Positions 6,766 to 45,800 of a DNA stretch of 64,000 nucleotides are shown one piece after another (positions within the stretch are counted from its first letter, which is position 1; each line of letters begins with the position of its first letter). Location of the stretch: positions 271,553 to 335,552 of the IMG/VR virus record IMGVR_UViG_3300031957_002643, one strand, 5' to 3'. The translations under genes and the position numbers were made by a program. A model generated the notes under the pieces. The model did not search any database. It saw only the letters and a program-made list of their open reading frames with translations, and had not been told where the DNA came from.

Positions 6766-6775
6766 AAATTTCATA

Positions 6776-7172: not shown

Positions 7173-7188
7173 GTTGTTCCGTGATATA

Positions 7189-7214
7189 CTTATAGAGGAT
7201 AATAGGGGTGTCAA
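7189..7214 (-). promoter_or_regulatory. Putative promoter for the Y RNA-rsr-pth2 operon
   Basis: TTGACA and TATAAG match this phage's motif, but the spacer is an atypical 14 nt. Confidence 0.4.
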
Positions 7215-7249
7215 CCGGTTTTTTGTAAAAAATCGAAAATTTTTTGTAA

Positions 7250-22521: not shown

Positions 22522-22890
22522 ATGCTCAAGACTTCACTCTATAAAGCGCCATCCGGTCAATTCATTGATTTGGATCGGATTCTGATTATCGATGTAGTAA
22601 AACATGATAGTGATTTTAATTATGTACATTTTGATGTAATTTTTCAACTTATGGATAAGCCTGTTCATTATGGCTTCGAACCTACTGCGGAGATAGTCAA
22701 TAGAGGTCGGGAACAAACCGAAGTGGAGGTAAAGGAGTTTGTTCGTAACGAGCTGATTGAACTTGCTGAAAAAGAGCGAGATGATCTCATTGCTGCTTGG
22801 AAAAGCTATAAAGATGATACGTTGACTGGAAATGAAAATTTGATTATGCATGCGATTGAAGTTGTTGCTAAAGGAATGATCGATGAGTGA
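22522..22890 (+). CDS. Hypothetical protein, paralog array member 1
   Basis: FIDL..I...RDDLIAAWKSYK. Confidence 0.75.
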   Translation: MLKTSLYKAPSGQFIDLDRILIIDVVKHDSDFNYVHFDVIFQLMDKPVHYGFEPTAEIVNRGREQTEVEVKEFVRNELIELAEKERDDLIAAWKSYKDDTLTGNENLIMHAIEVVAKGMIDE

Positions 22891-23254
22891 TAGTCAAATT
22901 TTTGAACTGGTGGGCGACGCTGATTCGACGTGGTTCATCGATGTTGCCGATTTGGTTTATGTTTCGGAACTCAGCATCAAATCAGTAGAAGTAAGATTTT
23001 ATTTGAGAACTAAATCATTGCCAGAAATAAGATTTGTATCCAGTGTAACTATTCCGTATAGAATGAGTTTGACAGATGCGAGAACTCCCGACGAGATTGA
23101 AAAAATCAAATCAAATATCGAAAATAGAGATCGTTTGATAGAACGATCAAAACAAAATCGACTTGATCTGATTAAGGCGTGGCGCGATCACAGAAGTGGT
23201 GTAATGCTGGCGAATTTTTTAGAAAAAGAAATGGATAACAATAATGTCAACTAG
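22883..23254 (+). CDS. Hypothetical protein, paralog array member 2
   Basis: RLDLIKAWRDHRSGVMLANFLEKE. Confidence 0.75.
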   Translation: MSDSQIFELVGDADSTWFIDVADLVYVSELSIKSVEVRFYLRTKSLPEIRFVSSVTIPYRMSLTDARTPDEIEKIKSNIENRDRLIERSKQNRLDLIKAWRDHRSGVMLANFLEKEMDNNNVN

Positions 23255-23543
23255 CCCGATTTTTATTCTGTATGATGGTGAAGCCATCGATCTGGAAGAG
23301 ATTTGTTATGTTTCCCTGCCATACATCAATGGGGATAGATTGAAATATTATTGCCTGTCTAAAAGAACGAACAATAAAATGTTTGAAGATGTTCAACTTC
23401 CGAGTCAAAATAATGAAAAACGGTCACAACGAGTCAAGGAAGTCAAAGAGCACCGGAAAAAGTTGATCCAAGCATGGAGTGACTATAAGTCCGGTGTGAT
23501 GTTGGCAAACCTCATAGAACAAGAGATTGCTAAAAATGAATAG
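23244..23543 (+). CDS. Hypothetical protein, paralog array member 3
   Basis: RKKLIQAWSDYKSGVMLANLIEQE. Confidence 0.75.
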   Translation: MSTSPIFILYDGEAIDLEEICYVSLPYINGDRLKYYCLSKRTNNKMFEDVQLPSQNNEKRSQRVKEVKEHRKKLIQAWSDYKSGVMLANLIEQEIAKNE

Positions 23544-23829
23544 TCCATTTTTTGAATTCTGTGATGGTTCTGTTGTTGAATTGGAACAGGTCTATCGTGT
23601 GTCACAGCCATATGAAAGTAGTAGTTATGCTACTTTTTACTACGGTTTTACCTATAGAACAAAGGTGAATGATACTGAAATAGAAGTATCTATGAGAGTA
23701 TTAGACACAGAAAAAGAAAATACCATTGAGATTGTGAATAAAAACAGAGAGGACTTTATTAAAGCACTGAATGATCATCGAAGTGGCGTCTTGGTTGCCA
23801 CCCTTTTGGAAAAGGCCATTTCTGAATAA
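23536..23829 (+). CDS. Hypothetical protein, paralog array member 4
   Basis: REDFIKALNDHRSGVLVATLLEKA. Confidence 0.75.
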   Translation: MNSPFFEFCDGSVVELEQVYRVSQPYESSSYATFYYGFTYRTKVNDTEIEVSMRVLDTEKENTIEIVNKNREDFIKALNDHRSGVLVATLLEKAISE

Positions 23830-24629
23830 TGTTCTGGATTGTTCAAGAAGATTTGTACAATGAGTACAAGTATGACGAATTCCTCAATGCTCTTGATCGT
23901 ATGAATATCGATCACGTATTGGTGAAGCCGATTCCATTTACAAACACGCTCGTGAACGAAGATGAAATCCATATCGATGATTCTCAGCCGATTATTGTTT
24001 CGGGTTCTGTCTCATTAGTTCGTGTCGCCAGACGCCGTGGTTGGTTGCCGGGAAGTTTCCATGACCACGATTTCTTTTTTCAAGAGTGGCGAGATGGATT
24101 TGGAAAAGACAATTGTCTAAACGGGCATGCCAAAATCGTAAAGCTCAAAGATGCGACATTCAATGGTCATGATATCTTTGTTCGACCGATTTTGGATAAC
24201 AAGTCCTTTTCTGGTGTAGTCATGAATCGAGAAGAATTTATGTCGTGGCAATCGCATTATGCGTATGTCGAAAGAACGGATGAATTTCAAACACTACATC
24301 AAGATACCGAAATCATGATGTGTCGGCCTAAGAACATCATGGCTGAATATCGATTTTTTGTCGCAGATGGAAAAGTTGTCACTGGCAGTCTTTATGTTCG
24401 TGGTCGTCGCGTTGTCTATGAAGAATGCCATGAAGAAGATGTTATCGAGTTCACGCAATCAATGGTAGATAAATTTCAACCAGCTAAAGCGTTTGTGTTG
24501 GACGTTGCAAGAATCGATGGTGGATTCAAAATTATCGAAGTGAACAATTTCAATTCTGCGGGCTTTTATGCATGTGATGTCGTCAAGATAATTAATGCAG
24601 TAGAAGAAATGACTGAATTTTATTCTTGA
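23829..24629 (+). CDS. ATP-grasp domain protein (DUF4343/R2K-like)
   Basis: IFVRP....KSFSG, EYRFFV.DGKVVTGSLY, AFVLDVA and KIIEVNNFNSAGFY. Confidence 0.85.
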   Translation: MFWIVQEDLYNEYKYDEFLNALDRMNIDHVLVKPIPFTNTLVNEDEIHIDDSQPIIVSGSVSLVRVARRRGWLPGSFHDHDFFFQEWRDGFGKDNCLNGHAKIVKLKDATFNGHDIFVRPILDNKSFSGVVMNREEFMSWQSHYAYVERTDEFQTLHQDTEIMMCRPKNIMAEYRFFVADGKVVTGSLYVRGRRVVYEECHEEDVIEFTQSMVDKFQPAKAFVLDVARIDGGFKIIEVNNFNSAGFYACDVVKIINAVEEMTEFYS

Positions 24630-24654
24630 CGAGAATATAACTACCGTATATAAG
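24626..24654 (+). promoter_or_regulatory. Sigma70-type promoter
   Basis: TTGACG-N17-TATAAG. Confidence 0.75.
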
Positions 24655-24695
24655 AGTTTTCATCGGGATTGGCCCGCACGATTTGGAGAAATTAA

Positions 24696-24839
24696 ATGGC
24701 AAAGAAGACGAATGCATCGAATGCAAGCAATCGGCGTGATCCGGTGAAGAAGCGTACTTCCATCGGCAATTCTACTCGTTCGCGTCCGACGAACAAGCAT
24801 TCGACGTTCAAGCGTACTCGCGGGCAGGGTCGTCCGTAA
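24696..24839 (+). CDS. Small basic protein (47 aa) ending KRTRGQGRP
   Basis: Hand-translated MAKKTNASNASNRRDPVKKRTSIGNSTRSRPTNKHSTFKRTRGQGRP; GGAG SD; the C-terminal RGQG motif is recalled from T4-like phages. Confidence 0.75.
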   Translation: MAKKTNASNASNRRDPVKKRTSIGNSTRSRPTNKHSTFKRTRGQGRP

Positions 24840-24844
24840 GAGTT

Positions 24845-25225
24845 AAGGGAAACTAGGCGTCTGGCCAAGAGGACGTAGGGTCAATCCGCCCAAGCGAAGC
24901 GCGAGATACCCGATAAGCTCAGTGTAGACATGATTAGATCGCTGCAATGTTCGTGTCGTCGGTCTAGTGGAACTTTGCTGGTGGTAGGCGATAAAAAATC
25001 CTACCTGACAAGGATACAAGCAAAACGAACGTATATCGGTTTTGTCGTCGGTCAGGTACCATCAGTTAATACAGTTTGGTAGCAGAGCGCGGAATGGAAT
25101 GCCTTTCGCGGGGTAAGGGCAGCGGAGTAATTGACCGCCAGCTAAATCCCCTCAAGCACCGGGCGCGAAGGACGAGAACAGAGACTCGTTAAGTGACAGT
25201 TTAGCACCTGATCCTACCAATCCAA
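24845..25225 (+). ncRNA. Candidate structured RNA of about 380 nt
   Basis: No ORF. Stems CTGGTGGTA/TACCATCAG (24978/25057), CCTGAC/GTCAGG (25004/25051), CAAAAC/GTTTTG, GCGG/CCGC and ACGAG/CTCGT. Confidence 0.55.
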
Positions 25226-25233
25226 TTTTCTTC

Positions 25234-25262
25234 TTGACTTATATCACTGGTACGTATATAAG
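25234..25262 (+). promoter_or_regulatory. Tandem promoter P1
   Basis: TTGACT-N17-TATAAG. Confidence 0.8.
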
Positions 25263-25321
25263 TAAGAACACAGTCGGCAACAAAGATCGACAAGAAAACT
25301 GACAAATACTGAAAAAACTTC

Positions 25322-25350
25322 TTGACTTTTGTTTGTGTGTCCTATATAAA
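25322..25350 (+). promoter_or_regulatory. Tandem promoter P2
   Basis: TTGACT-N17-TATAAA with an A-tract upstream. Confidence 0.8.
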
Positions 25351-25355
25351 GGTTA

Positions 25356-25377
25356 CAACGAAAGTTGCTCTTTGACA
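25356..25377 (+). promoter_or_regulatory. rrn-type antitermination signal (boxB-like GNRA hairpin plus boxA)
   Basis: CAAC-GAAA-GTTG hairpin overlapping TGCTCTTTGACA, 11/12 identical to E. coli rrn boxA TGCTCTTTAACA. Confidence 0.7.
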
Positions 25378-25746
25378 TTGTTGGGAAATAAGTGAGACGA
25401 ACCGATCTTCACGGGTCCATCGGACCTTTGATTAGCATGTATCTCTATTGTTCTGCCTTAACAGACCTGTTCTTTACCGGGCAGAATGGTGCGAAGACGA
25501 GAGTAGAGACTCGATCCTTAGACTTGATGTGGAGTTTGCAAGCTGCCACGAGATAAGGACAAACTCTGATGGCCCCTTGAAGGTCGGTTCGTTGGCAAAG
25601 CGTTGATCCGGGCGTGTAGATGGTGTGGACACCATACCGGATAACCCTTTAATAATCGCCTGACTTAAATATCGGGCTAACCCAGAAAGAAAACACTCCT
25701 AAAGAAATAAGGCGTAGTGTTCCTTCCGAGGCGATTAACAAGTTTT

Positions 25747-25822
25747 GCGGGATGATGGTGTAATGGAAACACGGTCTACAGTAGTAGGACATCTAGTAAG
25801 GTTCAATTCCTTACCCCTCGCA
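25747..25822 (+). other. Degenerate tRNA-like module
   Basis: D arm GTGT-AATGGAA-ACAC and T arm GTAAGG-TTCAATT-CCTTAC; imperfect acceptor and anticodon arms; no CCA. Confidence 0.55.
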
Positions 25823-26525
25823 TTTGAGAATTTGCATCTGACCCTGTTTTGGCTTGGTGACCGATAGCGCTAAGACCACCGCGTGTGGAGAAAAGGCGTG
25901 TGTAGGAGCTTCGTCTGAAACTGTGGCGACACGGCACTTTAAAGCCGGTGATGTAATGTGGATGGGCGTTTTTGGAAGCCACGATCCACCGCGTTGCAAC
26001 TGAGAGCACATAAAGCCGACAGTACATCGGTAAAAGTGCAGCCCCAAAGGCCACGGGGAACCGAAAACATCTTCCGCAACGGTTTCTATAAGATGTGATC
26101 GGGCAGCGCGTTAAATCTTTATCTAGTTGATAGACTAATTGAAAGAGTGAAAGTACTTTCGAGAAAGTGGAACCTCTGCATCGATGAACTCATCTGAAAT
26201 ACCAATTGTAACAATCGCAAATGCTATAAAAACCGTGAGCAAGGAGAATGGCCTTGACAGGCAATTGGTAGGAAGGATGTTTAGTAGTCGATATATGCGA
26301 AGCGAAGTGTAGAAGGTATGGAAACTTTAGTAAGGGGAAGTCGCCCGGACAGCAGTTGCGATTTAAACCGGGAAATATTGGTTCGATTCCAATGAAACTA
26401 GGCCTCATTTGTGCGAATGCACACAACATAATCCGTGAGCAAGTGCTGGTTCGGGACGTGATACTAGTTAGTCACTGAACCTGTAAAATAAAGGCACCGA
26501 TCCTTTCGAGGTGGACGCCACGACC

Positions 26526-26600
26526 TGACCGGCTGGTGTATGATAGGAAACACGCCCCTATTAACGGGGAATACGGTAGATGCAAGTTCTGCCCGGTCCA
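26526..26600 (+). other. Degenerate tRNA-like module
   Basis: GACCGG/CCGGTC acceptor, GTGT/ACAC D stem, CCCC-TATTAAC-GGGG arm and non-canonical T loop TGCAAGT. Confidence 0.55.
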
Positions 26601-28479
26601 ATAAATTCCTCTATCATGAGGATATGTAATTGCAGTAACGCCGATTATGGTGATCGAACCTTACTGTAATAAATCCCGTTCATACCGGGTAAAAGGCCTA
26701 ACCAGCCAGTATGACCGCATCGTGACTAGTGTAAAGCCCACATCTGATTCGAACGGGTGTGTGGATAAAAGAAGCACGTCCCTCTTCGATAGGGCAAGTG
26801 TCGGTTGCAAGTCCGCCGCACGATGCAACAGGTTTTGGTGAGCAGTTGGTTTTGAAACCTTCGGAATGCCGACAGTCGTAGTAGCGCACGGCCACCACAT
26901 TTGTTCTACTTAGGACCGACAAAACGATTGATCCCCATAATCTTTCGTACAAAACGGTCGCCTACTGATGGAGTAGGAGAATTCGGATCATGAAGCCCAC
27001 GAAAAGGGTGGATTGTTTCGGAGTATAGCAATCCGGGGCTTGATCTCTCCGGGGAACAATAGACTGGTGTGGAAATGCAGATATCTCAGCAGGGGACATC
27101 AATGCGCCATGTAAAAGGATGCGCGCTCCTGACCAGTTGAGTTCCGAATTAAAACCATCGTTCGCCAGATGCATATGGCCAATCTTGGGAGAACACGTGC
27201 TGTGTCGCGGTGATTGCAGTAAATAATACGTGAGGTAAAAGTCCTAACAACGCCGCGTCGTTTCAAAGAATGCGGTTCCTAGCACATTTGTGGAGTGGAT
27301 AGGAGCAAAAGCCTGATGCCCATGACAAAGTTCTCTTTGCCCATCAGGAAATAGCATTTGGGGACTACCGGGAGAGTTCGGTGCTACATACGAGTCCAGA
27401 CCGTGATGGTATGTTTTCCGAGATAAGCAAAGAAAACATGAAGGCCTCCATCATGGAACAGCGTACAGATGTCCTTTTTGTCTAAATGGCAGGGTTGATG
27501 CTTATCGTCTAATGTCGTGGCCGATTAGGACCTGAAATCGTATGTATTCTCGTGACGATGATGTAACCGTTAAGACACATCTTCGTTTATTGCATGCACA
27601 ATGGTGGGAAGATCGGTTCTGTCAGACCGTGATTTGCCAGAGATGCTTGCTGCGAGAATGAAACTTGAAGTTCCTACATGCCCTGATGGCGAAGCCGGTA
27701 GGATTAAATTAGTTGGATGCGCTCAGCTTCAAGTTTCAAAGTTCCGCTAGTGCACATGCGGAAGCAAGTGTGTGAAGGTATCCGTCAAACGTAAAAGTTT
27801 TGGTCCCCTTCTGACCTGTATAAACTAAGACGCCAGAACACAACGTAACAGGAGTTGTTTTGGCCATGGGTTAGCTACCATGACTTTGAGCGTCACCACA
27901 CTTGCACAAGTTTTAGCTGCCACCATCGTATGGTTCGGACAGCCTATTGAATGAAATAGGAATAAGCAGTGATTGATCTGAAAGCCGTGATGATCAAATT
28001 AATAGAATCTGTGAACGAGTAAATGAAGCAAAAGTCATCAGGAGTGATCATTACTGGTGGTGAGTAGTGAAACTGAAAGGGAACAAGGAGATCAAGCAGG
28101 GAGCAGGTCCACAACCTTTAGGGCGTCCGTGGAATTAGAGGTTCGAGTCCTCTTTTGGTCTATATTCCGGTTGCCGGGAATGAAATACTCGCCCCTGTTG
28201 TAAAGGGAAATGAGATAGCTGATCGCTTGATGCCTTGGCGGGTGGATGGTGTGATGTACGTGGCATTAAAGTTTCAGGACGTTCTTTTGTCGTTCTCTCC
28301 CCGATTAAAACGAGAGAACGTCCTGCATCCATATCAGGGAAAGGAGATCATAACCGGGTCGGTACAAAGGAATGATCTCTGGTAGTGAGGATGGTAGTCC
28401 GATTAACCCCATGGACATTGCCCCCTGATCGTTATAACTCACTTATTTTCCAACAATGCATTCCTAGAGGAATAAACCA

Positions 28480-28884
28480 ATGGACATCTGGATCAAACAC
28501 GACCTTTCACATGCACGTATCAAAAAGACCGAATCTTGGAATTATGAACAGGATTGCGTTAATGGTATGTTGACGCCCGGTGATACTTTGTACGGTGTTC
28601 AACTTATTACATACGCATATGATTCATTTGGAAAATCAAAAGAGCCATCAAAAACATGGCTTTATTTGACTGGTGATCCTACCGATCTTCTTGACTTAAT
28701 CGATGAGATCGATGAATATCTGTCTTCTTATTCCGAAGATGAGTTGAACCAATCCCAATTCGAGTATATCAATCTTGAAACTAAAAAGTTCAAGTTTCGC
28801 GATTCGGATAGATATATTGGAGATTTCAAGGGATGGGGCACATCGTATGATTCTGTGAATATAAAGATTATCCCCGTTCTATAA
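28480..28884 (+). CDS. Hypothetical protein
   Basis: 134 aa; GAGGA SD. Confidence 0.7.
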   Translation: MDIWIKHDLSHARIKKTESWNYEQDCVNGMLTPGDTLYGVQLITYAYDSFGKSKEPSKTWLYLTGDPTDLLDLIDEIDEYLSSYSEDELNQSQFEYINLETKKFKFRDSDRYIGDFKGWGTSYDSVNIKIIPVL

Positions 28885-31876: not shown

Positions 31877-32231
31877 TGATAGTGAAAAGTTGGATAAAAT
31901 TATTGATCTTCTGACGCAGTTGGTTAATGCGACAACCAATCCGTCAAATATTGTTGTACAAGAGCGCCCTTGGTCATTCCGTCTTTTACAGGAACTTGCT
32001 ACTGGTGAGGATCAAGATGATAATGGAATGGTCTATGGTCATGATTTTGTTTTCAATCATGTGACCGAATGGCATCCGCCAGCACTTCAAGCATCTGCTT
32101 CCAATCTGAAAAAGTCCTTTAAAGGAAAGTCTATTAGCTTTTTGGATTACGCCAAGTCTCTAAAGCCGACTGATGAAAAGAAGGGTGCGATCTTGGATTA
32201 CATTGAGAAGAAACAACAGTTGAATGGTTGA
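31869..32231 (+). CDS. Hypothetical protein
   Basis: GTG start after AAGGAAG. Confidence 0.65.
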   Translation: MASDSEKLDKIIDLLTQLVNATTNPSNIVVQERPWSFRLLQELATGEDQDDNGMVYGHDFVFNHVTEWHPPALQASASNLKKSFKGKSISFLDYAKSLKPTDEKKGAILDYIEKKQQLNG

Positions 32232-32644
32232 TGTCCAACGTAGCCTTTGTCACTTCCCAAAACACAATATTCTTTGGATGCACACCAGACCAAGCGATTG
32301 AAGGATCACCAGACACCTTTGTGAATGGCCTTCAAGTGCACCGCAAACAGGACCTTTGGTCGGTGCACGTGTGTAATCATGGAAACAGTTATGATGCATA
32401 TCTTCAAGAAGGTGCACCGACTCATTTCACAAATTCATTGAATACGGGAAGAGTCGGTGATCCGGTTCTTAGATACAGGCAAGTTGCCGGAACACAACCA
32501 TATCGAACCGGCACTGCATTTGTATCAACAGGATCGCCAGATACGTTCATCGGTGGCAATGCCGGTGGTGGTGTGGGTGATCCGTTTTTCCGTGCCGGTT
32601 CTGCTAGAGCAGGCCAGAAGCTTTATACTATTTTTGGTTCTTAA
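32231..32644 (+). CDS. PAAR-repeat spike tip protein (gp5.4-like)
   Basis: GSPDTFVNG..VHR..D...H.C and GRVGDP...GSPDTFIGG repeats. Confidence 0.85.
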   Translation: MSNVAFVTSQNTIFFGCTPDQAIEGSPDTFVNGLQVHRKQDLWSVHVCNHGNSYDAYLQEGAPTHFTNSLNTGRVGDPVLRYRQVAGTQPYRTGTAFVSTGSPDTFIGGNAGGGVGDPFFRAGSARAGQKLYTIFGS

Positions 32645-33829: not shown

Positions 33830-36800
33830 ATGCATCGTATTGATAGTGAAGGAAACGTCAATAATAGGTTCAGTGAAGGCAATCCGTCTCTTGGTATTGA
33901 AGGTACTAAGGTAACTGCTGATTGGCTCAATGATGTTCAAGAAAATATTGCGTATACCATTGAAGCTGCTGGTTTAACTCTGGAAAAGGGCAACAGTGCC
34001 CTTTTGGCTAATGCTATTCTTACACTGGTCGGTGAAGGTGGTTCGTTCTCCAATCTGACTACCAGAATTAGAGAACTGAATGATTTCTATCTTTATGGTG
34101 CCCGTAATGTGTTCCGTCAGGATGATGAACCTGATGAAGCAACTCAAGGTCCATTCTTCGATAATGACATTTGGATTGAAACCGATCAAAATCCAGAAAA
34201 GGTATGGCTCTGGAATTCACTAACTGAGACATGGGTTGATACGACAGAAGAAGCAGCAGCCCGTGGCATTCTTGCAAAACAAAAACAACAAGCAATTGCT
34301 GATGGTCTAGTACAAATTTTCATTCAAACCGATACGCCTTCAGGCGCATCCGAAGGTGACATCTGGTACAATAAACGAGATGATCTTCTCTTCGTTTATG
34401 AGAATAATATTTGGAACCGCGTATACGACGAGGTTGCCAAACGAAACATTGTTGAATCTGTCATCAACTTTGCTGTCGATAGTGCACAAGGAACAGCAGA
34501 TTCGAAAATTCTAACCTACTATCAAGATGATGCACCAACTGGCTTGACGGCATTGAATGATGGTGACATTTGGTTTGATACGGATAATAACAACAAGCCG
34601 CATCGATATACTCATCCTAATTGGGTTGAAGTTCGTGATGGGCGCATTGAAGACGCAATCGATTACGTCATTCTACAGGGTGCCATCGCAGATGGCACTA
34701 TTTTCGTTTACTTCTCTGAAGATGAACCTGATGCAATCAATCAGGCAGCATTAACACCACCAAATCCTGCACCATCTGAAGGTGATGTCTGGATCGATAT
34801 CACAGATGAAGGTGGCTCTCCTCGCAATGATCCCTATCTCTTTAGTAGTGGGTCTTGGGTATTACAGAATGATCCAGAGTTCCGATCATTATTGCTCAGT
34901 TTTGCAACAGCCAGATCAATTCAGGATGGTGCGGTAACAATTTATTTCAGTCCGACCGAACCAGATGATACCTATATTCCGCCACCGCGTTATGGTGATA
35001 TTTGGTTTGATACTGATGATGTGACCATTGATGATCCTGATGCTGCAAATCCTTCTACTGATCCTCAGATCACAGTTCCAAAATGGGAGCAGTATCGTTA
35101 TGACGGTACAAATTGGGTTCTCATTGAAGATTTCAAACTGAAAATTGTCGAAGCCAATTTGAAAATTGAAGAATTGGCAAGAGCTAGTGCTGATACTGCA
35201 TTGTCCGGCCAGATCACAACGGCAACCACTCGTATTGGTGAAAATGAAGCGACCATTCAGCAATCTCTATTATCGATTAATGGTATTGCCGGTGCATATG
35301 GGGTTCGAACCAATGTCAATAATGAAATTGTTGGTTTCGGTTTCCTCACTGATTATGAAAGAGAAATTGAATTCACCAAAACTGGATCGTTAGATTTCAA
35401 TCCGGGTGATGAAGTTTTTATTGGTGCTGATTGGGCAACAAAAACGTATTCCGCAGTCATCGTCACGGTAGACAATGTGAATGGCACCATGCGTGTCATC
35501 TCGGAAAGTGGAACGTTTGCTACTGGTGTAACAATCACGTCTCGATTGCGCTTGGACGCTAATGCTACTATCGACGCAGGAACCGTAAATCCGACACCGG
35601 GCACGTCAGAATTTGAAATCATCGTTGACAAATTCAAAGTCACCGATGGAACCACTTCTTCGACTCCATTCACTATTAGTGGGGGCGTTGTTTATGTCGG
35701 TGCTCTCGATACAAGCACCCCACAGGTTCAATTCATTGGTGATTTTGCTAATGAGCCAGATACCACATATGCAATCAATAGCATTTATAAGAACACGACA
35801 AACGGTAACACCTATATTCTTGAATATATTTCTGGTTCAAGTGGTCCAAAACAATGGGTGATCTTCCTAGAGAGAGGTGCTAACGCTAGAACGCTTGTTC
35901 TTTCATCCGACTCTCCGGGCTATCTATTTGACTCTAATGCTGTAAGCACGCCATCAAACGCAAGCATCACATTCCGGGTTCAATATCAGGGCCAGTCGAG
36001 TGCAATTGGTTCTGGTGACATTACTGTTTATGATAAAGATGATGTCGCTTTAAGTCCTACGCTCTCAAATACAAATTCAGTAGATAGTACAGTCAATGAC
36101 TCTGGCGGAACAACGCATTCCGGTTATTATGAATTTGATCTTGCATACTCTGAATTCAGTAGTTCCGATTTTCCTCTTACCGTTGAAGTGGACGATGGAA
36201 CTCTTACTGACACATTAGGTATTGTTCGTATCGTTGGTTCAACAGCAAAAACACTATCTATTAATCCAGACTCATTTGTGTTCTTGTTCGAAGATGACGT
36301 TGCAACCGATCCACAAAACTCATCGATCCATTTCCGCATTCAACACCAGAGCTTATCAACAGCACCAACAACTTCTGAGTTGACCATTGAAGATGCTGAT
36401 AGCACCACGTATTCATCAACAAACTTCACATCTGCTGGATCAGGATCAGGCGTAACTAGCTTTGAGCTTCTATGGTCCACAGTATCAGCAGCAACGTTCC
36501 CAATCACGGTTACTGTTACGGATGAGGGAATCACTGATGTTGTTGTTATCCGTCAGCTTATTGGTGGACTAGATGCTATTTCGGGCTTCCTGACAAATGA
36601 ATCACATTTGGTTCCAGCGGACGAATTAGGCAATATCGAATCTGGTGGATTGGATGGTGCAATTGGTACATTCGATGTGTATCAGGGCATCAGTAAAAAG
36701 AATACCGATGTCACTTATAGCGTAGCGTCATCAACCGGCTGTACCGCAACAATTTCAGATGCAGCAGATGGAACTGCTGGTGATTATTCAATCACTGCGA

Positions 36801-39800
36801 TGAGTGCCAATAAGGCAACCGCTGTTTTCCAAGCAGTCATCGATTCAGTTACCATCACAAAAACGATGAGTTTGACCAAATCTTTAGCAGGGGTTTCTGC
36901 TAAAGGTATTGCTCTATTTGCCACTGCACAAACGTTTGAGTTTGATGGCGATGATCAACCAAAAGATGCCGGTGCCAGTATCACATTGACCACAGTGCGA
37001 ACAGGGCTTTCGGGCATCACGTGGTCTGCTGTTGATGAAAATGATGATCCGGTTTCTCTTTCGGGAACCGGTGATGACACTCGAACGTTATCTATTGGTA
37101 ACTTCGGATCATCTCAATACGTCACTGTGACCGTTACTAAAGTTGATGGTGGTGACACTTATACGGATAAAATTCGTGTCGTGCGATTGGTCGAAGGTAG
37201 TAGCTCTGTCCAAGTAGTTCTGTCCAACGAAGCACATACTTTCTTCGCAGACGAAAATGGTGACATCTCTTCTGGTGATTTTGATTCTGGCAATTGCACA
37301 ATTTCAGTATATCGCGGAACTGCACAAATTTCATACAATGCATCTCCAACAAACAACACGTTTAGATTCGGAACAATCACTGCTTCGGCAGGTGTCACAC
37401 AAGATGGAACTGAAGTTGCACCAGAAGTAGGCATTTCTGCAATGACCAACTTGTTTGGTTATCTGGATGTTCCGGTCATTTATCGCGACAATGCTGGAAC
37501 AGATACGACTTATACCCGTAGAATTTCATATGTGAAATCGAGAGAAGGCGAAAAAAGTAGATCACTTCAACTTTACGGCAGTGATCAAGTATTCAGATTT
37601 GATGGCGATGATGATCCAATCGATGCGGGCCAAACTATCACGGTTACCGCGTTCAAGCAAAATCTTGGAACTCTAACGTTTGCTGCTGAAGATGATAGTG
37701 CAGTAGATGTTACCGCAGATTTGACCGGATCGGGCGACAGTAGAACCCTATCAATTACTGACTTTGGTGATGCTGAATTCGTTCGGGTGACTGCTTCTGC
37801 GGATTACACCGTCAACGGAAGCACCGAAACCGTAACAGATACTTTCACGATTTATAGAATTCGTGGTGCAAAAGCAGCGGTGTCTGTAATTCTTACCAAC
37901 GAATCTCATACCTTCTTTGCAGGACCAGATGGAAATATTGACAATGCATTGTTTGATGCAGGCAATTGTACTATTCGTGTTTTCCGTGGAGCAGAAGAAA
38001 TTTCTTACAATGGAACTCCAACCAATAATACATTCCGTTTCGGAACAATTGTCGCTTCTTCTGGTTTAACTCTTGACGGAACGGAAATAGCCCCAACTGT
38101 TGGTCTCACTGCTATGGAAGAAGATAGTGGAACTTTGACGGTTCCGGTTATCTATCGCGATCCAAACGGAAATGATGAGACCTATAATCGTGTGATTTCA
38201 TATTCGAAGGCAAAGGTTGGTGCACAGGCCCGTGGTCTGAGTATGAATGCCACTTCTCAAGTATTCAGATTTGATGGCGAAGGCGTAGCCATCAATGGTG
38301 CTGACACGATCACCTTTACAACACTCAGAACACTCTTGGGAACAGCACCTACGTGGGCGGCTATTGATGATCAAGGCGGCAATATCGCCCTTACCACGGT
38401 TGACGATGACACACGTAGATTGACGATTACCAACTTCGGAACGTCCCAATGGGTCCGCGTATCAGCCGAAGTCACGACGAGCATTGATGGTAACCCTGTC
38501 ACCTATAGAGATTACATTACCGTTGTTAGATTGCAGCGTGGACAGGATGCAATTACTGCTATTATCGAAAATGAAACACACGTCTTCCCTGCTGATGAGG
38601 ATGGTGTTGTTTCTGATTATTCTACAGGCGATACGCTTGTTCGGGTATTTCTTGGCGATACCGAAGTTTCATATGGTGTCAACAATGAACAATTCCGTTT
38701 TGGTACGATTACGCCAACAAATGTTCAGGATGCAGAGCTAACCCCGCCTGAAGTTGGTATTTCGAATATGACGGCTGATACTGGTCGTTTGAGATTACCA
38801 ATCATCTATAAAGATGCATCTGGTAATGATACGACTGTATACAAAGAAATCACTTATACTAAATCTCGTGCGGGGGTTGCAGCTAGAAATCTAAGATTGT
38901 TCCCATCTGCATTCGTTTTCGAATTTGATTCTGATGACAATGCCATCAACAATTCTGACGAAATCACCTTCACTGCCATTGCCACGAATGTTACTGGACT
39001 TTCATTTAGTGCAGTTGATCAAACCGACACACCAGTTAATCTCTCTGTGGTTTCAAATGTTGCGACATTGGCGATTACGGATTTCGATGATGCGGAAAAT
39101 GTAACAGTAACAGTAACCGGTACTTCAACAGTCAACGGAAGCACTGTTAATTTTAGTGATAGTGCTACGATTGTGAGATTGCGAGAAGGCGGTGGTGGTG
39201 CCAGTGTCGTTCTCACGAATGAGTCTCACACTTTCTATGCTGATGAGGAAAATGAAGTTCTACCTTCTGAGTATGCTGGTGGTAATTCGGTTATCAAGGT
39301 CTACGTTGGAACTTCAGAAATCAGTTATAATGCAACTCCAACGAACGGAACATGGCGTTTGGGGAGTATAACGGAAACCAATGTCACTAGGAACGGTGGA
39401 TTGAGTCTTCCGACTATTGGTATTTCCGATTTCGAAAAGGCATCGAACACAGGATCACTTGCGATCAATGTCATTTATCGTGACAATAATGGCAATGACA
39501 GAACGATCCCACGCCTGTTGACATATTCCAAATCAAAAGCTGGTACCGATGCTAGATCACTTAGGTTGATCGCAACTTCCCAGCTATTCAACTTCGACAC
39601 AGCCGGACAGCCAATCGACAGTGGTGATGAAATCACATTCAATGCCGTTCGTCAGTTCATTGATGGATCAGCGGTTTGGTCTGCTGTTGATGATCAGGGT
39701 GGAAACCCTTCTCTTACTCCGGGTGCGAACGGTGATGAGAAAGTATTAACTATTGGTGATTTTGGTACGGCTGAAAGTGTCGTTGTTTCCGTATCAGCAA

Positions 39801-42800
39801 CGGATAGTTACACAGGTGAAACTCTCTCGGATCAAATCACGATCTATAGACTCAACCAAGGTGCTGAAGGTCGAGATGGTATAACTGTAATTGTATCGAA
39901 TGAGACACACACCTTTATTGCAGACGAAGCAGGATTGGTAGACGATTATAGTACCGGAAATACCACTATCAGTGTTTATAATGCATCAACACAGGTGAAC
40001 TATTCAGCAACGAAAGTTGATAACTCCTTCCGTTTTGGAACTATTGTCGCAAACAATGTAACCAGAAACAATCTATTGAGTGAGCCAATTCTTGGTATCT
40101 CTACGATGTCTGATGAATTTGGAAGCTTGACGGTTCCAGTAATTTACACCAATGCTCAAGGCGAAGACACCACTTTCACAAAGGTGATTTCTTACACCAG
40201 AGCAAGAGCAGGTGTAAACGTTAGAAACATCAGATTACGAGCAGATTCATTAACATTTGAATTCGATCAGTTTGGTGATCCTATCGACAGTAATCAGGTC
40301 ATCACATTTACATCATTGGGAACAAATCTGCCTGATCCTACATGGACAATCACTAGTGATGGAAGTGCGGTCTTTACGTCCTCGCCGGATGCTGACACCA
40401 GAACAATTGATATCGATGATTTTGGAACATCTACAGAAGCAACCGTTAAAGTTTCAGCGACATACAATAGCGTTGACTATGAGGATGAGATCAGAGTCAT
40501 TCGACTTGAAAGAGCGAGAGACTCAGTATCAGTCGTTGGTTCTAATGAAAACCATACGTTCTTTGCAGATGAAGGTGGAACTATCCTTCCGGGCGATTTC
40601 GCAGGTGGTAATTGTACCTTCTATGTATATCATGGTTTAAGCCAGATTTCATATAATGCAACGCCAACCAATAATACATGGCGTTTTGGCACAGTTGTCG
40701 AGAATAATGTCACACAGACAGTTGTTGGTGGTGGAACCATTGGGGTTACTGCAATGTCTGCGGACAGCGGAAGCTTAACGGTTCCGATTATCTATCGTGA
40801 CAAAGATGGTGTAGATCAAACCTTTACGAGAATTATTTCTTATACCAAGGCTCGCAATGGTCGTGATGCTAGATGGGTGAGATTGGCAGCATCCGAACAA
40901 GTCATGCGCTTCAATAGCGATGACATTCCTGTTGATGCTGGTCAAACGATTGATATTACTGTAAGTTTGAACCTAGTTGACATCGGTGATGTCACTGTCA
41001 CGGCTGAAGACGAGTCTCAATCTGCAATTACTCTGGGCGGCACCGGAGCAAATAGAACACTTAGTATTTCTAACTTTGGTGCAAGTGAATATGTCGTAGT
41101 TGAAGCTGTCGCCAATATTACAGTTGAAGGACAAGCACAAGTCATCACTGACCAGATCACGATTGGTCGTGTTGCTGATGGTTCTGGTGTTGTGCAGGCA
41201 CTAGTAGAAAACGAAGCCCATACTTTTGCCGCTGATGAAGATGGTGTAGTTGACAGTTATGCTGGTGGCAACACAATCATTCGAGTATATCGTGGTTCCG
41301 AGGAAATTTCTTACAATGGAACCCCGACGAATAATACATTCCGTTTCGGAACAATTGTTGCATCTTCTGGGGTGACAAGAAATACTGGACTGTCCGCACC
41401 TAATGTCGGTGTGTCTGCAATGACTGAGAATTTCGGTACATTGACGGTTCCAGTCCTGTATCGTGATCCGAACGGCAATGAAGTCACCGTCAACAAGGTT
41501 ATTTCATATTCTAAATCTGTCGCCGGTAGAAACGCAAGATTGTTGCGTTTGTATGGATCAAGTCAGGTGTTCCGTTTCACATCTGATGATGTTCCTGACA
41601 ATCCTGCGGACGAAGTTACTCTAACTGCAATTTCAACAAACCTTGGCGTACCGACTTGGACCGCAGTAGATGAGAATGGAACCAATAGGGATTCAATCCT
41701 AACAGCAGGAGCAAATGCCTACGAAAAAGTCATTACGGTTTCCGATTTCGATCCATACGAAAGAATCGAGGTCACGGTATCTGCAACGTATAATGCGACC
41801 ACTTATACTGATCAGTTCACGATTTATAAAATTCGTGAAGGATCATCAAATATTGTTGTGGCTCTGACGAATGAAGCCCACATTTTTGGATCAGATGAAG
41901 CTGGTACGGTTGCAGATTATGGAAGCGGTAATTCTATCGTCAATGTTTTCCGTGGCGGGGATCAAATCAGTTACAATGCCGGTGGTGCTGATAACACGTT
42001 CTTGATCGATAATTTTGTGGTCAACAATTCCACGAGAAATACAGGATTAACGCTTCCGACTGTCGGCATCAGTGCCATGTCGGCAGACGAAGGATCGTTG
42101 ACCTTTGACGTGGTTTACACAAATGCCGCAGGTGTTGTTGAACCGGCAGTAACCAAGGTTATTTCATATTCAAAATCTCGTGCGGGTGTGAATGCTAGAA
42201 GTCTGAGACTATTATCTTCAGCACAGCAATTCAATTTCGATTCTGACAATGATCCCATCGATGCTGGTGCGACTATCACATTTGAGGCTGTCAAAACGTA
42301 TATTCCAGAAGCGGTAACTTTCGCGGCAGTCGATCAAGATAGTGGAAGTATTACGTTAACTGGATCAGGGAATACCCGTTCTCTATCGGTAACCAATTTT
42401 GGCGCATCCACGTATGTTGATGTTACTGTATCCGTAACGAGTGATGTCGTTGGTTCATCTACAGATTTTGAAGACACCATACGAATTGTTCGCATTAAAG
42501 ATGGTAACACCGGTATAGATGGTAAAGATTCGCTATCCATATTCGCGACAAATCCAACGACCACATTCGCCCTTGATCAGAATGGTAGCATGGTTGAAGC
42601 GTATTCTGTTGGTGACACCACCTTTGAAGTGTATCTCGGGACAACCGCTGTTTCATATTCAGGAACAACTACCGCAAATACATGGCGATTTGGAACAATA
42701 TCTGGCACGAATGTTGATGTTTATCAGAGCGGTGCGACTGTTGGTATTAGAGACATGTATGCCAATCAGGCGTCTATCGCAGTTCAGGTCATTTATAGAA

Positions 42801-45800
42801 ATTCAGATGCACAAGACATTATCACAAACAGAACAATAAGTTATGCCAAAGCACGTTCTGGTGTCGCTGAAAAAGAATGGTATTTGTCCTTCGACAAACA
42901 GACCTTTGCGTTTGATGGTGACAATAATGCCAAGAACGGTTCTGATACCATAACGGCAACGTTGACTCGTTCTAGTGGTCTCTCATCACCAGTATGGACA
43001 ACTGATCCGTCCATCACTCTATCAAATGGAGTGAATGAAGATCAGAAGATCATCACAATTAGTAATTTTGGTACGAATGATACCGTCAATGTAAAGGCTA
43101 GATCAACTCTTGGAACGCCGGTATATTCTACTGATTATAATTACGATTTCTACTCAGATAAGAACGGATGGACATCAGCAGGCGCAGTAACTAATGTTAT
43201 CGATGAGGGCTGGGACATCACAATTGATGATGCTGTGAATTCTAATCAGAACATTTATAAAGATTTTCCTGCTGCAAATTATTTCGATGGTGCGAATTAT
43301 AGATATGCGGTGGTTGATATTGAAATTACGTCTGCTACTGGTGATCAACAAAAACGTCTATACTGGAAGACTTCTGGTCACAGTTATTCCAATTCTTATT
43401 ATGCGGAAGCGAATGTTCAGGATGCAACCCTGACTACACCGGGAAGATACATTCTTATTTTTGATCTTCACAATCCTACTGTTGGTGGATCGGACTTTAG
43501 TGATAATGAAATTCAAGGCCTGCGATTTGACGCATTTGGTGCTGCTGATGCGACCTTTACTATTCATGGGATTTCTCTTGCAACTGATGTCGTCTATTAC
43601 GAAGACAATTTCACTATTTCAAGAATCATAGATGGATCAACGACAATTCAAGTTGTTGCGTCAAACGAATCTCATACATTCAAAGCTAACGAAGAAGGAA
43701 CACTTACCGGAAGCATTTCTGACGGTAACTGTGAGTTCAGTGTTTATCGCGGTTCCGAATTAATCACTTACAGCGCAACGCCAACAAATAATAGATGGCG
43801 GTTTGGAACAATTTCAGTAACAAGCGGAACGGCTACAGTAACCAATTCGACATCAACGATCACGCCAACCGCGTTGAGCACTGATAGCGCAACTGTTGAC
43901 GTTCAAATCATCTATCGTGATCCGAATGGTGATGACACCACCATTACCAGAACGTTGTCTTACGCAAAGGCGCGTCAAGGTATTCTGGCGAGAACTCTGA
44001 AGGTAACCGCATCATCTCTTGTTTTGGAATATGACCAGAATGGATCATTGAAGACACCGGGCGATTACATTGATTTCACCATTGATGGTTTGAATTTGTC
44101 TTCACCATGGACTGTATCGTGTACTGATCAGGATAGCTCAAATCTCACACTGTCACAACAGTCAGCGAATGTGTATCGTTTGACCGGTGCCAATTTTGGT
44201 TCAGCCACAAGAGCTACCTTCACTGCATCCAAGTCAGTAACGATTGATGGAACTCCACAAACGTTTACGGACAGTGTTACTGTTGGTAGAATTCAAGATG
44301 CTGTTTCAAATATTCAAGTCATTCCGACAAATGAATCTCACACCTTCTTTGCCAATGAAGATGGTTATGTTGCAGATTACACTGGTGGATTGAGCACATT
44401 CATTGTGTATCGTGGTCTAGAGCTTATCAATTTCAACTCATCTCCAACAAACAATACTTGGAGATATGGAACGATCACACCAACTGGAATTAGTCATACC
44501 GTTGATGGTGATGAAATTTCTGTTTCAGCTATGACTGCAAACGAAGCTTCTGTTTCGGTTCAAGTCATTTATCGTGATCCGAATGGACAGGACTTCACCT
44601 TCACACAGCAGTTGTCATACGCAAAGGCAATTCAAGGATTTATTGGTGCTGGTGGTGTTTCTATTTTCCAAACCAATCCGACCACCACATTTACGACCGA
44701 TCAGGCTGGCGTTCTTCTCAGTGGATCATATGATGACGGCAATTCTACCTTCTCAGCATATGCAGGTGACGAGGAACTATCGTATAGTACGTTCCCGAAG
44801 GTAAACACGTTCCGTATCACTAATGTGTCTGGAACGAATGTAACCGTAGACAATGGGGAATCGCTTCCGACTGTTGGTATTACTGGTATGTCTTCGGATA
44901 CTGGTAAAATTGAAACAACAATTATTGCATATCCAGCAACCACTAGGGTTTATAACTTCGGATTTGAGAAAGGCTCTCCAAGCACACAAACGCCTAATGG
45001 TCCAACAGGATGGTTGTTCTCAGGCTCAACGGGCAATGTCGGATATATTGCAACCGTTGATCCGAATTCTAATTTCAATTCCACCATTTCTTGGGGCGCG
45101 GTTGATAATAACGATCCGTTTGGAAGTGCCGGTTGGTATCAAGTTGGTAAGAGATTTGGTCTGGTTGATAGTGCAACCTTTATCAAAATTAGTGCCAAAA
45201 TCCGTTCATATAATTTGAATGTTCCCCCAACACTTTCTGTAAACTCAAACGAAAGCTATTTCACAGAATCAGACGTATTTGTCGAGGCAGTATTCAAAGA
45301 TGAAGACAATGTTCAAATCGGCACAACCTATTACTCTAAGACACTTTCACATAAGTTGTATGATGAAGGGCGTGCTGGTGAGGCATTAGGCGGTCAGTGG
45401 TTGATGTTCACAGATACCGTGCCCGTTCCTGCTGGTACTGAAATTATTGAAATCTATCTGGTATCATCAGACGGAAGTAATACTGTCCAGACAAAAGGCT
45501 ACAAAGGCGCAAATGCTGGTAACCTTTATGATGATGTTATTTTTGAATCTGATGCTGGTATCTACGATATCACTCGTGAAATCCCAATCGTTCAGACTAC
45601 AGCATACTCACGCGCAAAAACTGGTGAGAATTCAGTACTTTATTACATCAAGCCAACAAACGGAACAGCAATCAAGAATGGTTCTGGAACGCTCACTGGT
45701 GAACTTAGAAAGGTTGATGGTCCATCTGATACAAAAGTGACATCAGGAGCAATCCGTTTGTATCAGGATGGAGTATTGATTACTTCTCCTACGAATTATG

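What the first reader, a model, noticed from the sequence alone, without database searches (positions are those of the whole stretch)
25352..28440. Candidate ~3.1-kb giant structured non-coding RNA in a phage
Seen: in an otherwise wall-to-wall coding genome, this stretch has no ORF over 85 aa and none with a convincing SD. It is full of nested helices: 15-bp 25396-25410/25579-25593, ACCAATTG/CAATTGGT (26201/26261), 10-bp 26629/26661, GGAGA..GATCA..AAGCCC nested with GGGCTT..GATC..TCTCC (26976-27050), CCTGATG/CATCAGG (27313-27348), perfect 12-bp 27659/27727 and perfect 11-bp 28275/28315. GNRA, UUCG and T loops also occur, and G-U pairs favour the + strand. Known: large ornate RNAs such as GOLLD, ROOL and OLE are roughly 600-800 nt, and GOLLD and ROOL are often tRNA- or phage-associated. 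Inference: one RNA several times larger, or a co-transcribed set of unknown RNAs.
Basis: partly seen in the sequence, partly recalled or inferred. Interest (0 to 1): 0.95.

Follow-up and report, generated by a model that had tools for sequence, protein, structure and literature searches.

The report
Phage RNA operon mimicking rRNA operon
A 335-kb phage carries a 3.1-kb stretch that encodes no protein but is built like a bacterial ribosomal-RNA operon (strong promoters, the host's anti-termination signal, ends that pair with each other) and holds several conserved folded RNAs, some tRNA-like, of unknown function.

Summary
In detail: window 24840-28479 has no coding signal on either strand, in any genetic code or as gene remnants. 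It is a real, conserved, non-coding transcription unit, but the evidence favours a co-transcribed set of RNA modules over one giant RNA.

Two tandem consensus promoters are followed by a small GNRA hairpin and an 18-nt boxA. That boxA is identical to the leader of alphaproteobacterial rRNA operons. A 21-26 bp helix then joins the 5' leader (25373-25399) to the 3' trailer (28430-28460) across 3.08 kb.

Two related jumbo phages (L167, L002) carry the same cassette. In L167 the leader-trailer helix is kept through five compensatory double changes. Four internal modules are conserved with covariation: a tRNA-like cloverleaf, a ~230-nt domain, a ~200-nt domain with a T-arm, and an 80-nt hairpin. 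The domain has 21 of 46 pairs compensatory, reached by 0 of 500 shuffles.

Module order, spacing and content differ among the three phages, and the 3' half has no homologue. The same boxA precedes ordinary tRNA arrays in many other phages.

No Rfam family matches. Folding-energy z-scores are uninformative. Expression, processing and function are inferred, not shown.

The parts
24626..24654 (+). Promoter P1: TTGACG, 17 nt, TATAAG. The stop codon of the ATP-grasp gene lies inside its -35 element.
   Evidence: TTCTTGAC-N-TATATAA occurs only three times in the 64 kb, all here, where 0 are expected. Sequence read.
24696..24839 (+). Gene for a 47-aa very basic protein with a GGAG Shine-Dalgarno. It belongs to a widespread family of small phage proteins.
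   Evidence: Conserved in L002 and L167. 489 tblastn relatives in IMG/VR. No Pfam or PHROG family.
24840..25233 (+). About 390 nt of untranslated sequence after the small gene. It is specific to this phage and its role is unknown.
   Evidence: In L002 and L167 the next promoter follows the small gene directly. Fold z-score -0.95. No Rfam hit.
25234..25350 (+). Tandem promoters P2 (25234-25262) and P3 (25322-25350), each TTGACT, 17 nt, TATAAG/TATAAA.
   Evidence: (repeat D3). Equivalent promoters are present in L002 and L167.
25356..25367 (+). CAAC-GAAA-GTTG hairpin at the 5' end of the transcript, in the position of boxB. L002 has a 12-bp hairpin at the same place.
   Evidence: Sequence read.
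25366..25383 (+). rrn-type boxA, TGCTCTTTGACATTGTTG.
   Evidence: Identical in L002. Exact in at least 120 bacterial genome stretches, nearly all Alphaproteobacteria. It lies 200-300 nt upstream of the 16S rRNA gene in the three genomes tested.
25373..25399 (+). Leader strand of the leader-trailer (closing) helix.
   Evidence: (I1). It covaries with the trailer strand in L167.
25397..25592 (+). Long local hairpin (arms 25397-25424 and 25565-25592) immediately after the leader strand. Analogous hairpins occur in L167 and L002.
   Evidence: (I2).
25746..25822 (+). tRNA-like cloverleaf M1. It has intact D and T arms, an acceptor stem with two mismatches, and a loop carrying AGUA with A in place of U33. 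It is not a canonical tRNA.
   Evidence: ARAGORN finds it only at relaxed threshold, and Rfam tRNA gives no hit at E <= 10. About 79% identical to L167 1725-1791, with two compensatory acceptor pairs.
25842..26068 (+). Domain D, a conserved ~230-nt structured RNA. It contains a 32-nt block (26032-26063) that is 100% identical in L167.
   Evidence: Three-way alignment and consensus fold: 46 pairs, 21 with compensatory change, 92% of cells paired against 41-47% when slid, 0 of 500 shuffles as good. Covariance model R1 scores it 117 bits.
26200..26404 (+). Module M3: a 5' hairpin domain (26200-26270) followed by an expanded tRNA-like element with a T-arm (26376-26392).
   Evidence: 77% identity over 202 nt with L167 3390-3586. 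43 pairs, 7 compensatory, 12 one-sided (C-G to U-G, U-A to U-G or A-U to G-U), none broken; slid controls give 0-2.
27659..27738 (+). Module M, an 80-nt hairpin RNA with a conserved single-stranded core.
   Evidence: Homologue at L002 8066-8140, with 34 nt at 88% identity and three compensatory pairs read from the alignment. Fold z-score -2.75. Only these two phages have it in IMG/VR.
28089..28162 (+). Second compact tRNA-like element, with an 8-bp acceptor stem and T-arm GGTTCGAGTCC. No homologue is available.
   Evidence: Unverified by comparison.
28430..28460 (+). Trailer strand of the closing helix. It ends 6 nt before the Shine-Dalgarno of the next gene.
28480..28884 (+). 134-aa gene, probably co-transcribed, since no terminator lies between it and the RNA unit.

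Best explanation
Proposed identity: an early, strongly promoted, untranslated operon of a jumbo phage, built on the plan of a bacterial rRNA operon and occupying the niche of a phage tRNA operon.

Shown:
- Tandem sigma-70 consensus promoters.
- A boxA identical to the rrn leader boxA of Alphaproteobacteria.
- A covarying helix that pairs the leader with a trailer 3.08 kb downstream.
- At least four internal RNA modules whose base pairs are kept by compensatory changes in related phages. Two or three of them are tRNA-like.

Inferred:
- Host NusB/NusE and the other rrn antitermination factors load at boxA. This lets RNA polymerase cross 3 kb of untranslated RNA without Rho termination.
- These factors keep the leader close to the polymerase until the trailer emerges.
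- RNase III cuts the leader-trailer duplex, which frees the downstream 134-aa mRNA.
- RNase P, RNase Z and RNase E cut at the tRNA-like modules and release several stable small RNAs.

Most speculative: the products act on tRNA or translation biology, for instance as tRNA mimics that stand in for or decoy tRNAs attacked by host defence nucleases. This would fit a phage that also carries 10 tRNAs, a Ro60 protein with Y RNAs, and a peptidyl-tRNA hydrolase.
For: Non-coding.

Promoters: the motif occurs only here in the 64 kb.

boxA:
- 18/18 identity with L002.
- Exact matches in at least 120 mostly alphaproteobacterial genome stretches.
- The 16S gene starts 200-300 nt downstream in all 3 of 3 genomes tested.
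- The 16-mer also precedes same-strand tRNA genes within 1 kb in 24 of 77 IMG/VR stretches.

Closing helix:
- It is the best self-complementarity in a blastn of the tract against the whole window and is part of the full-length MFE.
- Empirical p < 1/3292.
- In L167 the leader's best partner in the whole 7.7-kb contig is again the sequence just before the downstream gene.
- A 14-bp perfect core there differs from the window's at five positions on both strands.

Modules: covariation. G.U-tolerant one-sided changes point to the + strand.

Modularity: different order, spacing and content in the three phages.

Background: leader-trailer helices and boxB/boxA/boxC in rrn operons are described in PMC10250234.
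Against: - There are no expression or processing data.
- Only three genomes carry the cassette, and the copies from three samples are identical, so covariation rests on 2-3 sequences per module.
- boxA is degenerate in L167.
- The L002 leader pairs locally, not with the 3' end.
- About 2 kb (26404-28430) has no homologue apart from module M.
- The tRNA-like modules fail both tRNA models, so cutting by RNase P or RNase Z is an assumption.
- Folding energies are no better than shuffles.
- The host is inferred from boxA alone. The closest cultured phage has only 31% rIIA identity.
Confidence: 0.6

Rival explanations
1. One giant (~3.1 kb) structured RNA. It would fold as a single unit closed by the leader-trailer helix and act as such, for example as a scaffold or ribonucleoprotein core, or as a pre-rRNA mimic that soaks up host rRNA-processing or assembly factors.
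For: The closing helix spans the whole unit and covaries. The full-length MFE keeps it and predicts many long-range helices. The rrn-like design is the one cells use for 1.5-2.9 kb functional RNAs (PMC10250234).
Against: No conserved core spans the unit. Homology is confined to separate modules. L167 has about 1.2 kb more between domain D and M3 and different 3' content. Module M is outside the unit in L002, whose unit is half the size. The long-range helices of the MFE other than the closing one have no comparative support, and the z-scores are null.
Confidence: 0.12
2. A decaying tRNA array. A former boxA-led tRNA operon would have lost function in its genes, leaving T-arm relics in neutral DNA.
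For: The same boxA heads ordinary tRNA arrays in other phages. Three orphan T-arm motifs and two imperfect cloverleaves are present. Most of the tract is unalignable between relatives.
Against: The non-canonical features are themselves conserved between phages whose flanking protein is only 65% identical. Stems are kept by compensatory changes. One 32-nt block is 100% identical. Promoters, boxA and the closing helix are intact. Domain D is not tRNA-like at all.
Confidence: 0.1
3. A non-autonomous mobile DNA element bounded by terminal inverted repeats, with the two arms of the 'closing helix' serving as those repeats.
For: The 3.85-kb tract is an indel relative to L002, where the two flanking genes are 11 nt apart. 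The arms are a 21-32 bp imperfect inverted repeat. The cassette lies on different sides of the ATP-grasp gene in different phages.
Against: There is no transposase or any protein-family hit, and no target-site duplication is visible. No other copy exists in the window or in IMG/VR. The promoters, small gene and boxA move with the cassette but lie outside or across the left arm, so the arms do not bound the unit that moved. The left arm overlaps boxA. One pair in the window's helix is G.U, which is RNA-compatible on the + strand only.
Confidence: 0.04
4. Protein-coding after all, through stop-codon reassignment, many small ORFs or pseudogenes.
For: The region does contain one real small gene upstream (24696-24839).
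Against: All three stops occur at 17-38 per + frame. The codon score is negative throughout. No family hits in 51 pieces. Homologues conserve base pairs, not reading frames.
Confidence: 0.02

Closest known systems
Bacterial rRNA operon leader: boxB/boxA/boxC antitermination plus the leader-trailer helix cut by RNase III
   Same: Tandem strong promoters and a hairpin followed by boxA. The boxA is 18/18 identical to alphaproteobacterial rrn leaders. A leader strand next to boxA pairs with a trailer about 3 kb downstream. tRNA-like elements lie inside the unit (PMC10250234).
   Different: No 16S, 23S or 5S rRNA is present. The cargo is a set of unrelated small structured RNAs. The unit sits in a phage and ends in a protein-coding gene. 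No boxC was identified.
Phage tRNA operons, such as the arrays in the IMG/VR contigs L014, L031 and L070. From memory, the T4 tRNA cluster also encodes two small stable RNAs of unknown function.
   Same: The same boxA leader. The location is within the tRNA region of the genome, between tRNA-Gly/Met and tRNA-Gly. T-arm and D-arm motifs are present.
   Different: No canonical tRNA is present in 3.6 kb. The tRNA-like modules have expanded or altered anticodon arms. There are additional non-tRNA domains and a closing helix.
GOLLD and ROOL large ornate RNAs
   Same: Large non-coding RNA in a phage, next to tRNA genes. Function unknown.
   Different: No match to either covariance model at E <= 10. 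The modular content varies among relatives instead of forming one conserved 600-800 nt fold.
YrlA / bacterial Y RNAs (tRNA-mimicking partners of Ro60)
   Same: tRNA mimicry with T-arm and D-arm. This same phage encodes Ro60 with YrlA-like RNAs 18 kb away.
   Different: No YrlA hit and no Ro-binding motif on the + strand inside 24840-28479. The elements here have normal, not permuted, strand order.
boxA-protected untranslated arrays such as CRISPR arrays (from memory: Stringer et al. 2020)
   Same: Use of an rrn-type boxA to carry RNA polymerase through a long untranslated transcript.
   Different: No repeat-spacer structure is present.

Membership tests
rrn-type antiterminated transcription unit | boxA matching the rrn leader consensus, on the transcribed strand, shortly after the promoter | tested here: met
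   TGCTCTTTGACATTGTTG at 25366-25383, about 10 nt after the predicted start. It is exact in at least 120 bacterial stretches and lies upstream of 16S in 3 of 3 genomes checked.
rrn-type antiterminated transcription unit | boxB-like hairpin upstream of boxA | tested here: inconclusive
   A 4-bp GNRA hairpin at 25356-25367, and a 12-bp hairpin at the same place in L002. No functional test was done.
rrn-type antiterminated transcription unit | Leader-trailer helix enclosing the mature RNA | tested here: met
   25373-25399 / 28430-28460. 0 of 3292 controls are as stable. It covaries in L167.
rrn-type antiterminated transcription unit | Binding of NusB/NusE, Rho resistance and RNase III cleavage | not testable with these tools
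   Needs biochemistry or genetics.
rRNA operon | Encodes 16S, 23S or 5S rRNA | tested here: not met
   No SSU, LSU or 5S match at gathering score or at E <= 10. The same tool finds them in the bacterial loci.
tRNA gene array | Canonical tRNA genes recognised by ARAGORN or the Rfam tRNA model | tested here: not met
   None in 24630-28479. Relaxed ARAGORN hits are no more frequent than in control blocks.
tRNA-like RNA | T-arm with GGTTCRANTCC loop-stem, plus acceptor-type and D stems kept in relatives | tested here: met
   Three T-arm motifs in this tract, where 0.32 are expected in the whole 64-kb window. The M1 and M3 stems are kept with compensatory changes.
GOLLD / ROOL / OLE | Match to the family covariance model | tested here: not met
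   No hit at E <= 10.
YrlA / Y RNA | Match to the model, a Ro-binding stem, and a permuted tRNA-like domain | tested here: not met
   No hit in the tract, and no Ro-binding motif on the + strand. These features are met elsewhere in the window, at 6699-7174 on the - strand.
Transposable element with terminal inverted repeats | Transposase or multiple copies, target-site duplication, and arms that bound the mobile unit | tested here: not met

The most novel reading that the evidence does not exclude
The whole 3.1-kb leader-trailer-closed transcript is a functional entity: a phage-made pre-rRNA look-alike. It would be transcribed by the host's rRNA antitermination complex. It would either assemble into a large RNA or RNP particle, or titrate host rRNA-processing and ribosome-assembly factors (Nus factors, RNase III, Ro60/PNPase) during infection. 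That would make it several times larger than any known ornate bacterial or phage RNA.
Probability: 0.12. Interest if true: 0.9.

Novelty: new variant of a known kind. Interest (0 to 1): 0.62.

Why it matters
If confirmed, this would show that phages copy the complete design of host rRNA operons to express long untranslated RNAs. That design comprises the exact boxA, a boxB-type hairpin and a leader-trailer helix.

It would also show that the same boxA is a common head of phage tRNA arrays. I found no paper in the searched library that links the two.

The finding adds several RNA motifs absent from Rfam 15, including conserved tRNA mimics with deliberately non-canonical anticodon arms. This comes at a time when phage tRNAs are being tied to escape from tRNA-cleaving defence systems (PMC10264068, PMC11464382, PMC13096335).

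The boxA identity also gives a host clue (Alphaproteobacteria) for an uncultured 335-kb phage lineage.

Tried and rejected
- Stop-codon reassignment: rejected.
- Pseudogene remnants: 51 pieces gave no Pfam or PHROG hit.
- Rfam at gathering score and at E <= 10: nothing in the tract.
- blastn 'distant' against 50,697 phage records: no match.
- Folding-energy z-scores in 200-nt windows, on both strands, and on sub-blocks: no signal, even where covariation is strong. A whole-unit shuffle test timed out.
- Internal paralogy: none beyond the inverted repeats.
- Relaxed ARAGORN counts: no better than control blocks.
- Strain-level variation: the copies from two further samples fetched here (L007, L008) are identical over 12 kb, as is the IMG/VR source record, so there is nothing to compare.
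- Relatives found through the flanking ATP-grasp protein: only L002 and L167 carry a cassette. Homologues at 35-45% identity (L005, L006, L168-L173) have ordinary genes there.
- Pattern scans of IMG/VR for module M and for the invariant 32-mer core: only the known phages.
- Covariance model of domain D over 843 kb of fetched phage loci: only the three training sequences.
- Small basic protein as a marker: it is widespread, but elsewhere it is not next to ORF-free DNA.
- A long-range closing helix in L002: only an ambiguous candidate (8881-8916 / 9925-9960).
- The two ORFs inside the L167 unit (179 aa on the - strand, 92 aa on the + strand): no family hits, so it is undecided whether they are genes.
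Full report
**Source and setting.** The window is the last 64 kb of IMGVR_UViG_3300031957_002643, a 335.5-kb phage contig.
- It encodes rIIA and rIIB, ten tRNAs and a 4535-aa ORF.
- It has no cultured relative closer than 31% rIIA identity.
- The finding lies between an R2K ATP-grasp gene (23829-24629) and a 134-aa gene (28480-28884).

**Observation.** The tract is non-coding.
- No start-to-stop ORF exceeds 84 aa.
- All three stop codons are common in every + frame, which rules out recoding.
- A codon-usage log-odds score trained on the window's long genes is negative on both strands from about 24850 to 28450 and positive in the flanking genes.
- None of the 51 stop-to-stop pieces of 45 aa or more matches Pfam or PHROGs.
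- Three T-arm motifs (GGTTCRANTCC) occur on the + strand outside any called tRNA, against 0.32 expected in the whole window.
- Rfam has nothing at gathering score or at E <= 10. A blastn search of 50,697 phage records finds nothing.
- Folding-energy z-scores are no better inside than outside: -0.71 against -0.87, -0.95 and -0.46. It turns out to be uninformative, as shown below.

**Anatomy.** The motif TTCTTGAC-N-TATATAA occurs three times in the 64 kb, all of them here.
- P1 (24626-24654) overlaps the stop codon of the ATP-grasp gene. It drives a 47-aa basic ORF with a good Shine-Dalgarno (24696-24839), followed by about 390 untranslated nt.
- P2 and P3 (25234-25262 and 25322-25350) are in tandem.
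- The predicted transcript starts near 25357 with a CAAC-GAAA-GTTG hairpin that runs into TGCTCTTTGACATTGTTG (25366-25383).
- From 25373 the RNA can pair with 28430-28460: 21 contiguous pairs (one G.U) plus flanking pairs.
- This is the best self-complementarity found when the tract is blasted against the entire window. It is part of the minimum-energy fold of the full 3114 nt.
- Its duplex energy is -48.5 kcal/mol. The null is -19.6 +/- 5.3 for 3292 equally spaced 60-mer pairs across the window, and none reaches it.
- The trailer strand ends 6 nt before the Shine-Dalgarno of the 134-aa gene. No terminator intervenes.

**boxA.**
- The 18-mer is exact in at least 120 stretches of bacterial genomes, nearly all Alphaproteobacteria. 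Many of these sit at contig ends, as rRNA operons do.
- In the three stretches tested, the 16S rRNA gene starts 200-300 nt downstream on the same strand, followed by tRNAs, 23S and 5S. A hairpin usually precedes the motif. It is therefore the rrn leader boxA of that class.
- The 16-mer core also occurs in 77 IMG/VR stretches. In 24 of them a same-strand tRNA gene starts within 1 kb downstream, and arrays of 3-11 tRNAs follow.
- So this leader is a common head of phage tRNA operons. The unit studied here is one of those by position and leader, but without tRNAs.
- The role of boxA and of leader-trailer helices in rRNA operons is described in PMC10250234.

**Relatives.**
- Copies of the phage from other samples are identical over 12 kb and give no variation.
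- L002 (IMGVR_UViG_3300010368_000009, ATP-grasp 69% identical) has the two flanking genes 11 nt apart. It carries the cassette on the other side of the ATP-grasp gene. The cassette there comprises a promoter, the homologous small ORF, a second promoter, a 12-bp hairpin, the identical boxA and about 1.5 kb of ORF-free DNA. That DNA holds four orphan T-arm motifs belonging to tRNA-like elements with expanded anticodon arms.
- L167 (Logan SRR25180568_20870, ATP-grasp 65% identical) was found through a protein search. It has the same layout upstream of its ATP-grasp gene, about 3.7 kb long, with a degenerate boxA.
- More distant ATP-grasp homologues have no cassette.

**Covariation.**
- *Closing helix.* In L167 the best partner of the leader in the whole 7.7-kb contig is the sequence just upstream of the downstream gene. 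The 14-bp perfect core GTGAATATCAAGTG/CACTTGATATTCAC differs from the window's helix on both strands at five positions and on one strand at one more, G.U to A-U. About 1% of control pairs (10 of 1137) are as stable.
- *Domain D* (window 25842-26068, L167 1866-2110, L002 8600-8832). The consensus fold has 46 pairs, and 21 carry a compensatory change in at least one phage. 92% of cells are paired, against 41-47% when partners are slid by 1-3 columns. The covariation score is 0.67 against 0.10-0.15. No shuffle out of 500 reaches the observed values. A 32-nt block is 100% identical between the window and L167.
- *M3* (26200-26404 against L167 3390-3586, 77% identical). 43 pairs: 7 compensatory, 12 changed on one side only, none broken. 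The one-sided changes are C-G to U-G, U-A to U-G or A-U to G-U, which is tolerable only on the + strand. Slid controls give 0-2.
- *M1* (25746-25822). A cloverleaf with invariant D and T arms and two compensatory acceptor pairs. Read by eye, the anticodon-type stem is replaced completely: GUCUA/AGGAC in the window, CCCAC/GUGGG in L167. The loop keeps AGUA.
- *Module M* (27659-27738 against L002 8066-8140). Three compensatory pairs.
- With only two or three sequences per module these are counts, not probabilities. They are consistent across five independent elements, and the controls are far lower.

**One RNA or several.** The modules are islands.
- A global alignment of the window and L167 cassettes is 30% identical overall.
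- L167 has about 1.2 kb between domain D and M3, where the window has about 60-140 nt.
- Module M lies outside the boxA unit in L002.
- L002 lacks M1.
- The window's 26404-28430 has no homologue except module M.
- A covariance model of domain D finds nothing in 843 kb of other phage loci, including the boxA-led tRNA arrays.
- This is the behaviour of a container operon with exchangeable cargo, like a tRNA array, not of one large ribozyme-like fold. A single functional 3-kb RNA is not excluded (probability about 0.12).

**Mechanism.** The architecture is shown: promoters, boxA, leader-trailer helix and conserved structured modules on the + strand. The following steps are inferred from what these elements do in rRNA operons.
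- Nus-factor antitermination carries the polymerase through 3 kb of untranslated RNA.
- The tethered leader pairs with the trailer.
- RNase III cuts the roughly 21-26 bp duplex (21 contiguous pairs plus flanking pairs), which also releases the mRNA of the 134-aa gene.
- RNase P, RNase Z and RNase E trim the tRNA-like modules.
- The function of the products is unknown. The best guess is tRNA or translation-related mimicry or counter-defence, given the context and recent work on phage tRNAs and tRNA-cleaving defences (PMC10264068, PMC11464382, PMC13096335).

**Rivals.**
- A decaying tRNA array is contradicted by conservation of the non-canonical features and of the regulatory elements.
- A transposon with inverted repeats lacks a transposase, extra copies and a target duplication. 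Its 'repeat' overlaps boxA, and the parts that move with the cassette lie outside it.
- Coding explanations are excluded.

**Verdict.** This is a real and unusual non-coding locus: a phage operon that mimics an rRNA operon and carries new structured RNAs. It is a new variant of known kinds (phage tRNA or small-RNA operons, and rrn-type antitermination), not a demonstrated giant RNA.

Noticed in passing
window 5027-6643 (-), 6690-7215 (-): The phage encodes a Ro60/Rsr orthologue (TROVE plus Ro60 vWA domains). Directly upstream on the same strand is a promoter and an ORF-free stretch with Y-RNA-like genes. These comprise a YrlA match (40.5 bits, E 2e-7, below Rfam's gathering score) at 6789-6929, a weaker one at 6984-7041, and two copies of a Ro-binding-stem module at 6699-6767 and 7105-7174. 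This explains the orphan T-arm motifs at 6870 and 7027. TROVE proteins in some jumbo phages are mentioned in PMC7824862.
   Followed up: partly
window 4605-5021 (-): Peptidyl-tRNA hydrolase PTH2 gene next to the Ro60 gene.
   Followed up: no
window 24696-24839 (+); L087-L165: The 47-aa basic protein (..VKKRTSIGNS.RSRP.NK....K.YRGQG.) belongs to a family with 489 tblastn relatives in IMG/VR and no Pfam or PHROG model. In other phages it sits among ordinary genes. Its function is unknown, and an RNA- or DNA-binding role is plausible.
   Followed up: partly
L014, L020, L027, L031, L045, L053, L059-L063, L070, L075, L076 and others: An rrn-type boxA (GCTCTTTGACATTGTT) lies directly upstream of tRNA arrays in many unrelated phage contigs: 24 of 77 matches have a same-strand tRNA within 1 kb. 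No paper in the searched library links boxA with phage tRNA arrays.
   Followed up: partly
L174-L253 (genome contigs): The exact 18-mer boxA is almost confined to Alphaproteobacteria (Microvirga, Jiella, Tritonibacter, Rhodobacteraceae, Novosphingobium, Maricaulis and others). This suggests an alphaproteobacterial host for this uncultured phage.
   Followed up: partly
L002 9073-9853 (+): Four tRNA-like elements have canonical D and T arms and paired acceptor stems but abnormal anticodon arms: a 9-nt loop, a long hairpin, and a 97-nt insert. One reaches the Rfam tRNA gathering score (29.7 bits) and ARAGORN calls none.
   Followed up: partly
L167 3949-4097 (+): A tRNA-like element of about 150 nt with T-arm, 6-bp acceptor stem and an encoded ...A-CCA 3' end, followed by a 92-aa ORF with a Shine-Dalgarno inside the non-coding unit.
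   Followed up: no
window 23829-28884 versus L002 and L167: The cassette lies downstream of the ATP-grasp gene in the window but upstream of it in both relatives. In the window four small ORFs (22522-23829) occupy the place the cassette has in L002.
   Followed up: partly
window 49712-49722 (+): Another GGTTCAATTCC T-arm motif, this one inside the 552-aa ORF 48260-49918. It may be chance.
   Followed up: no
window 33830-47437 (+): A single 4535-aa ORF. A small ORF two genes upstream (L007 9752-10165, about window 32231-32644) has a faint PAAR-motif hit.
   Followed up: no
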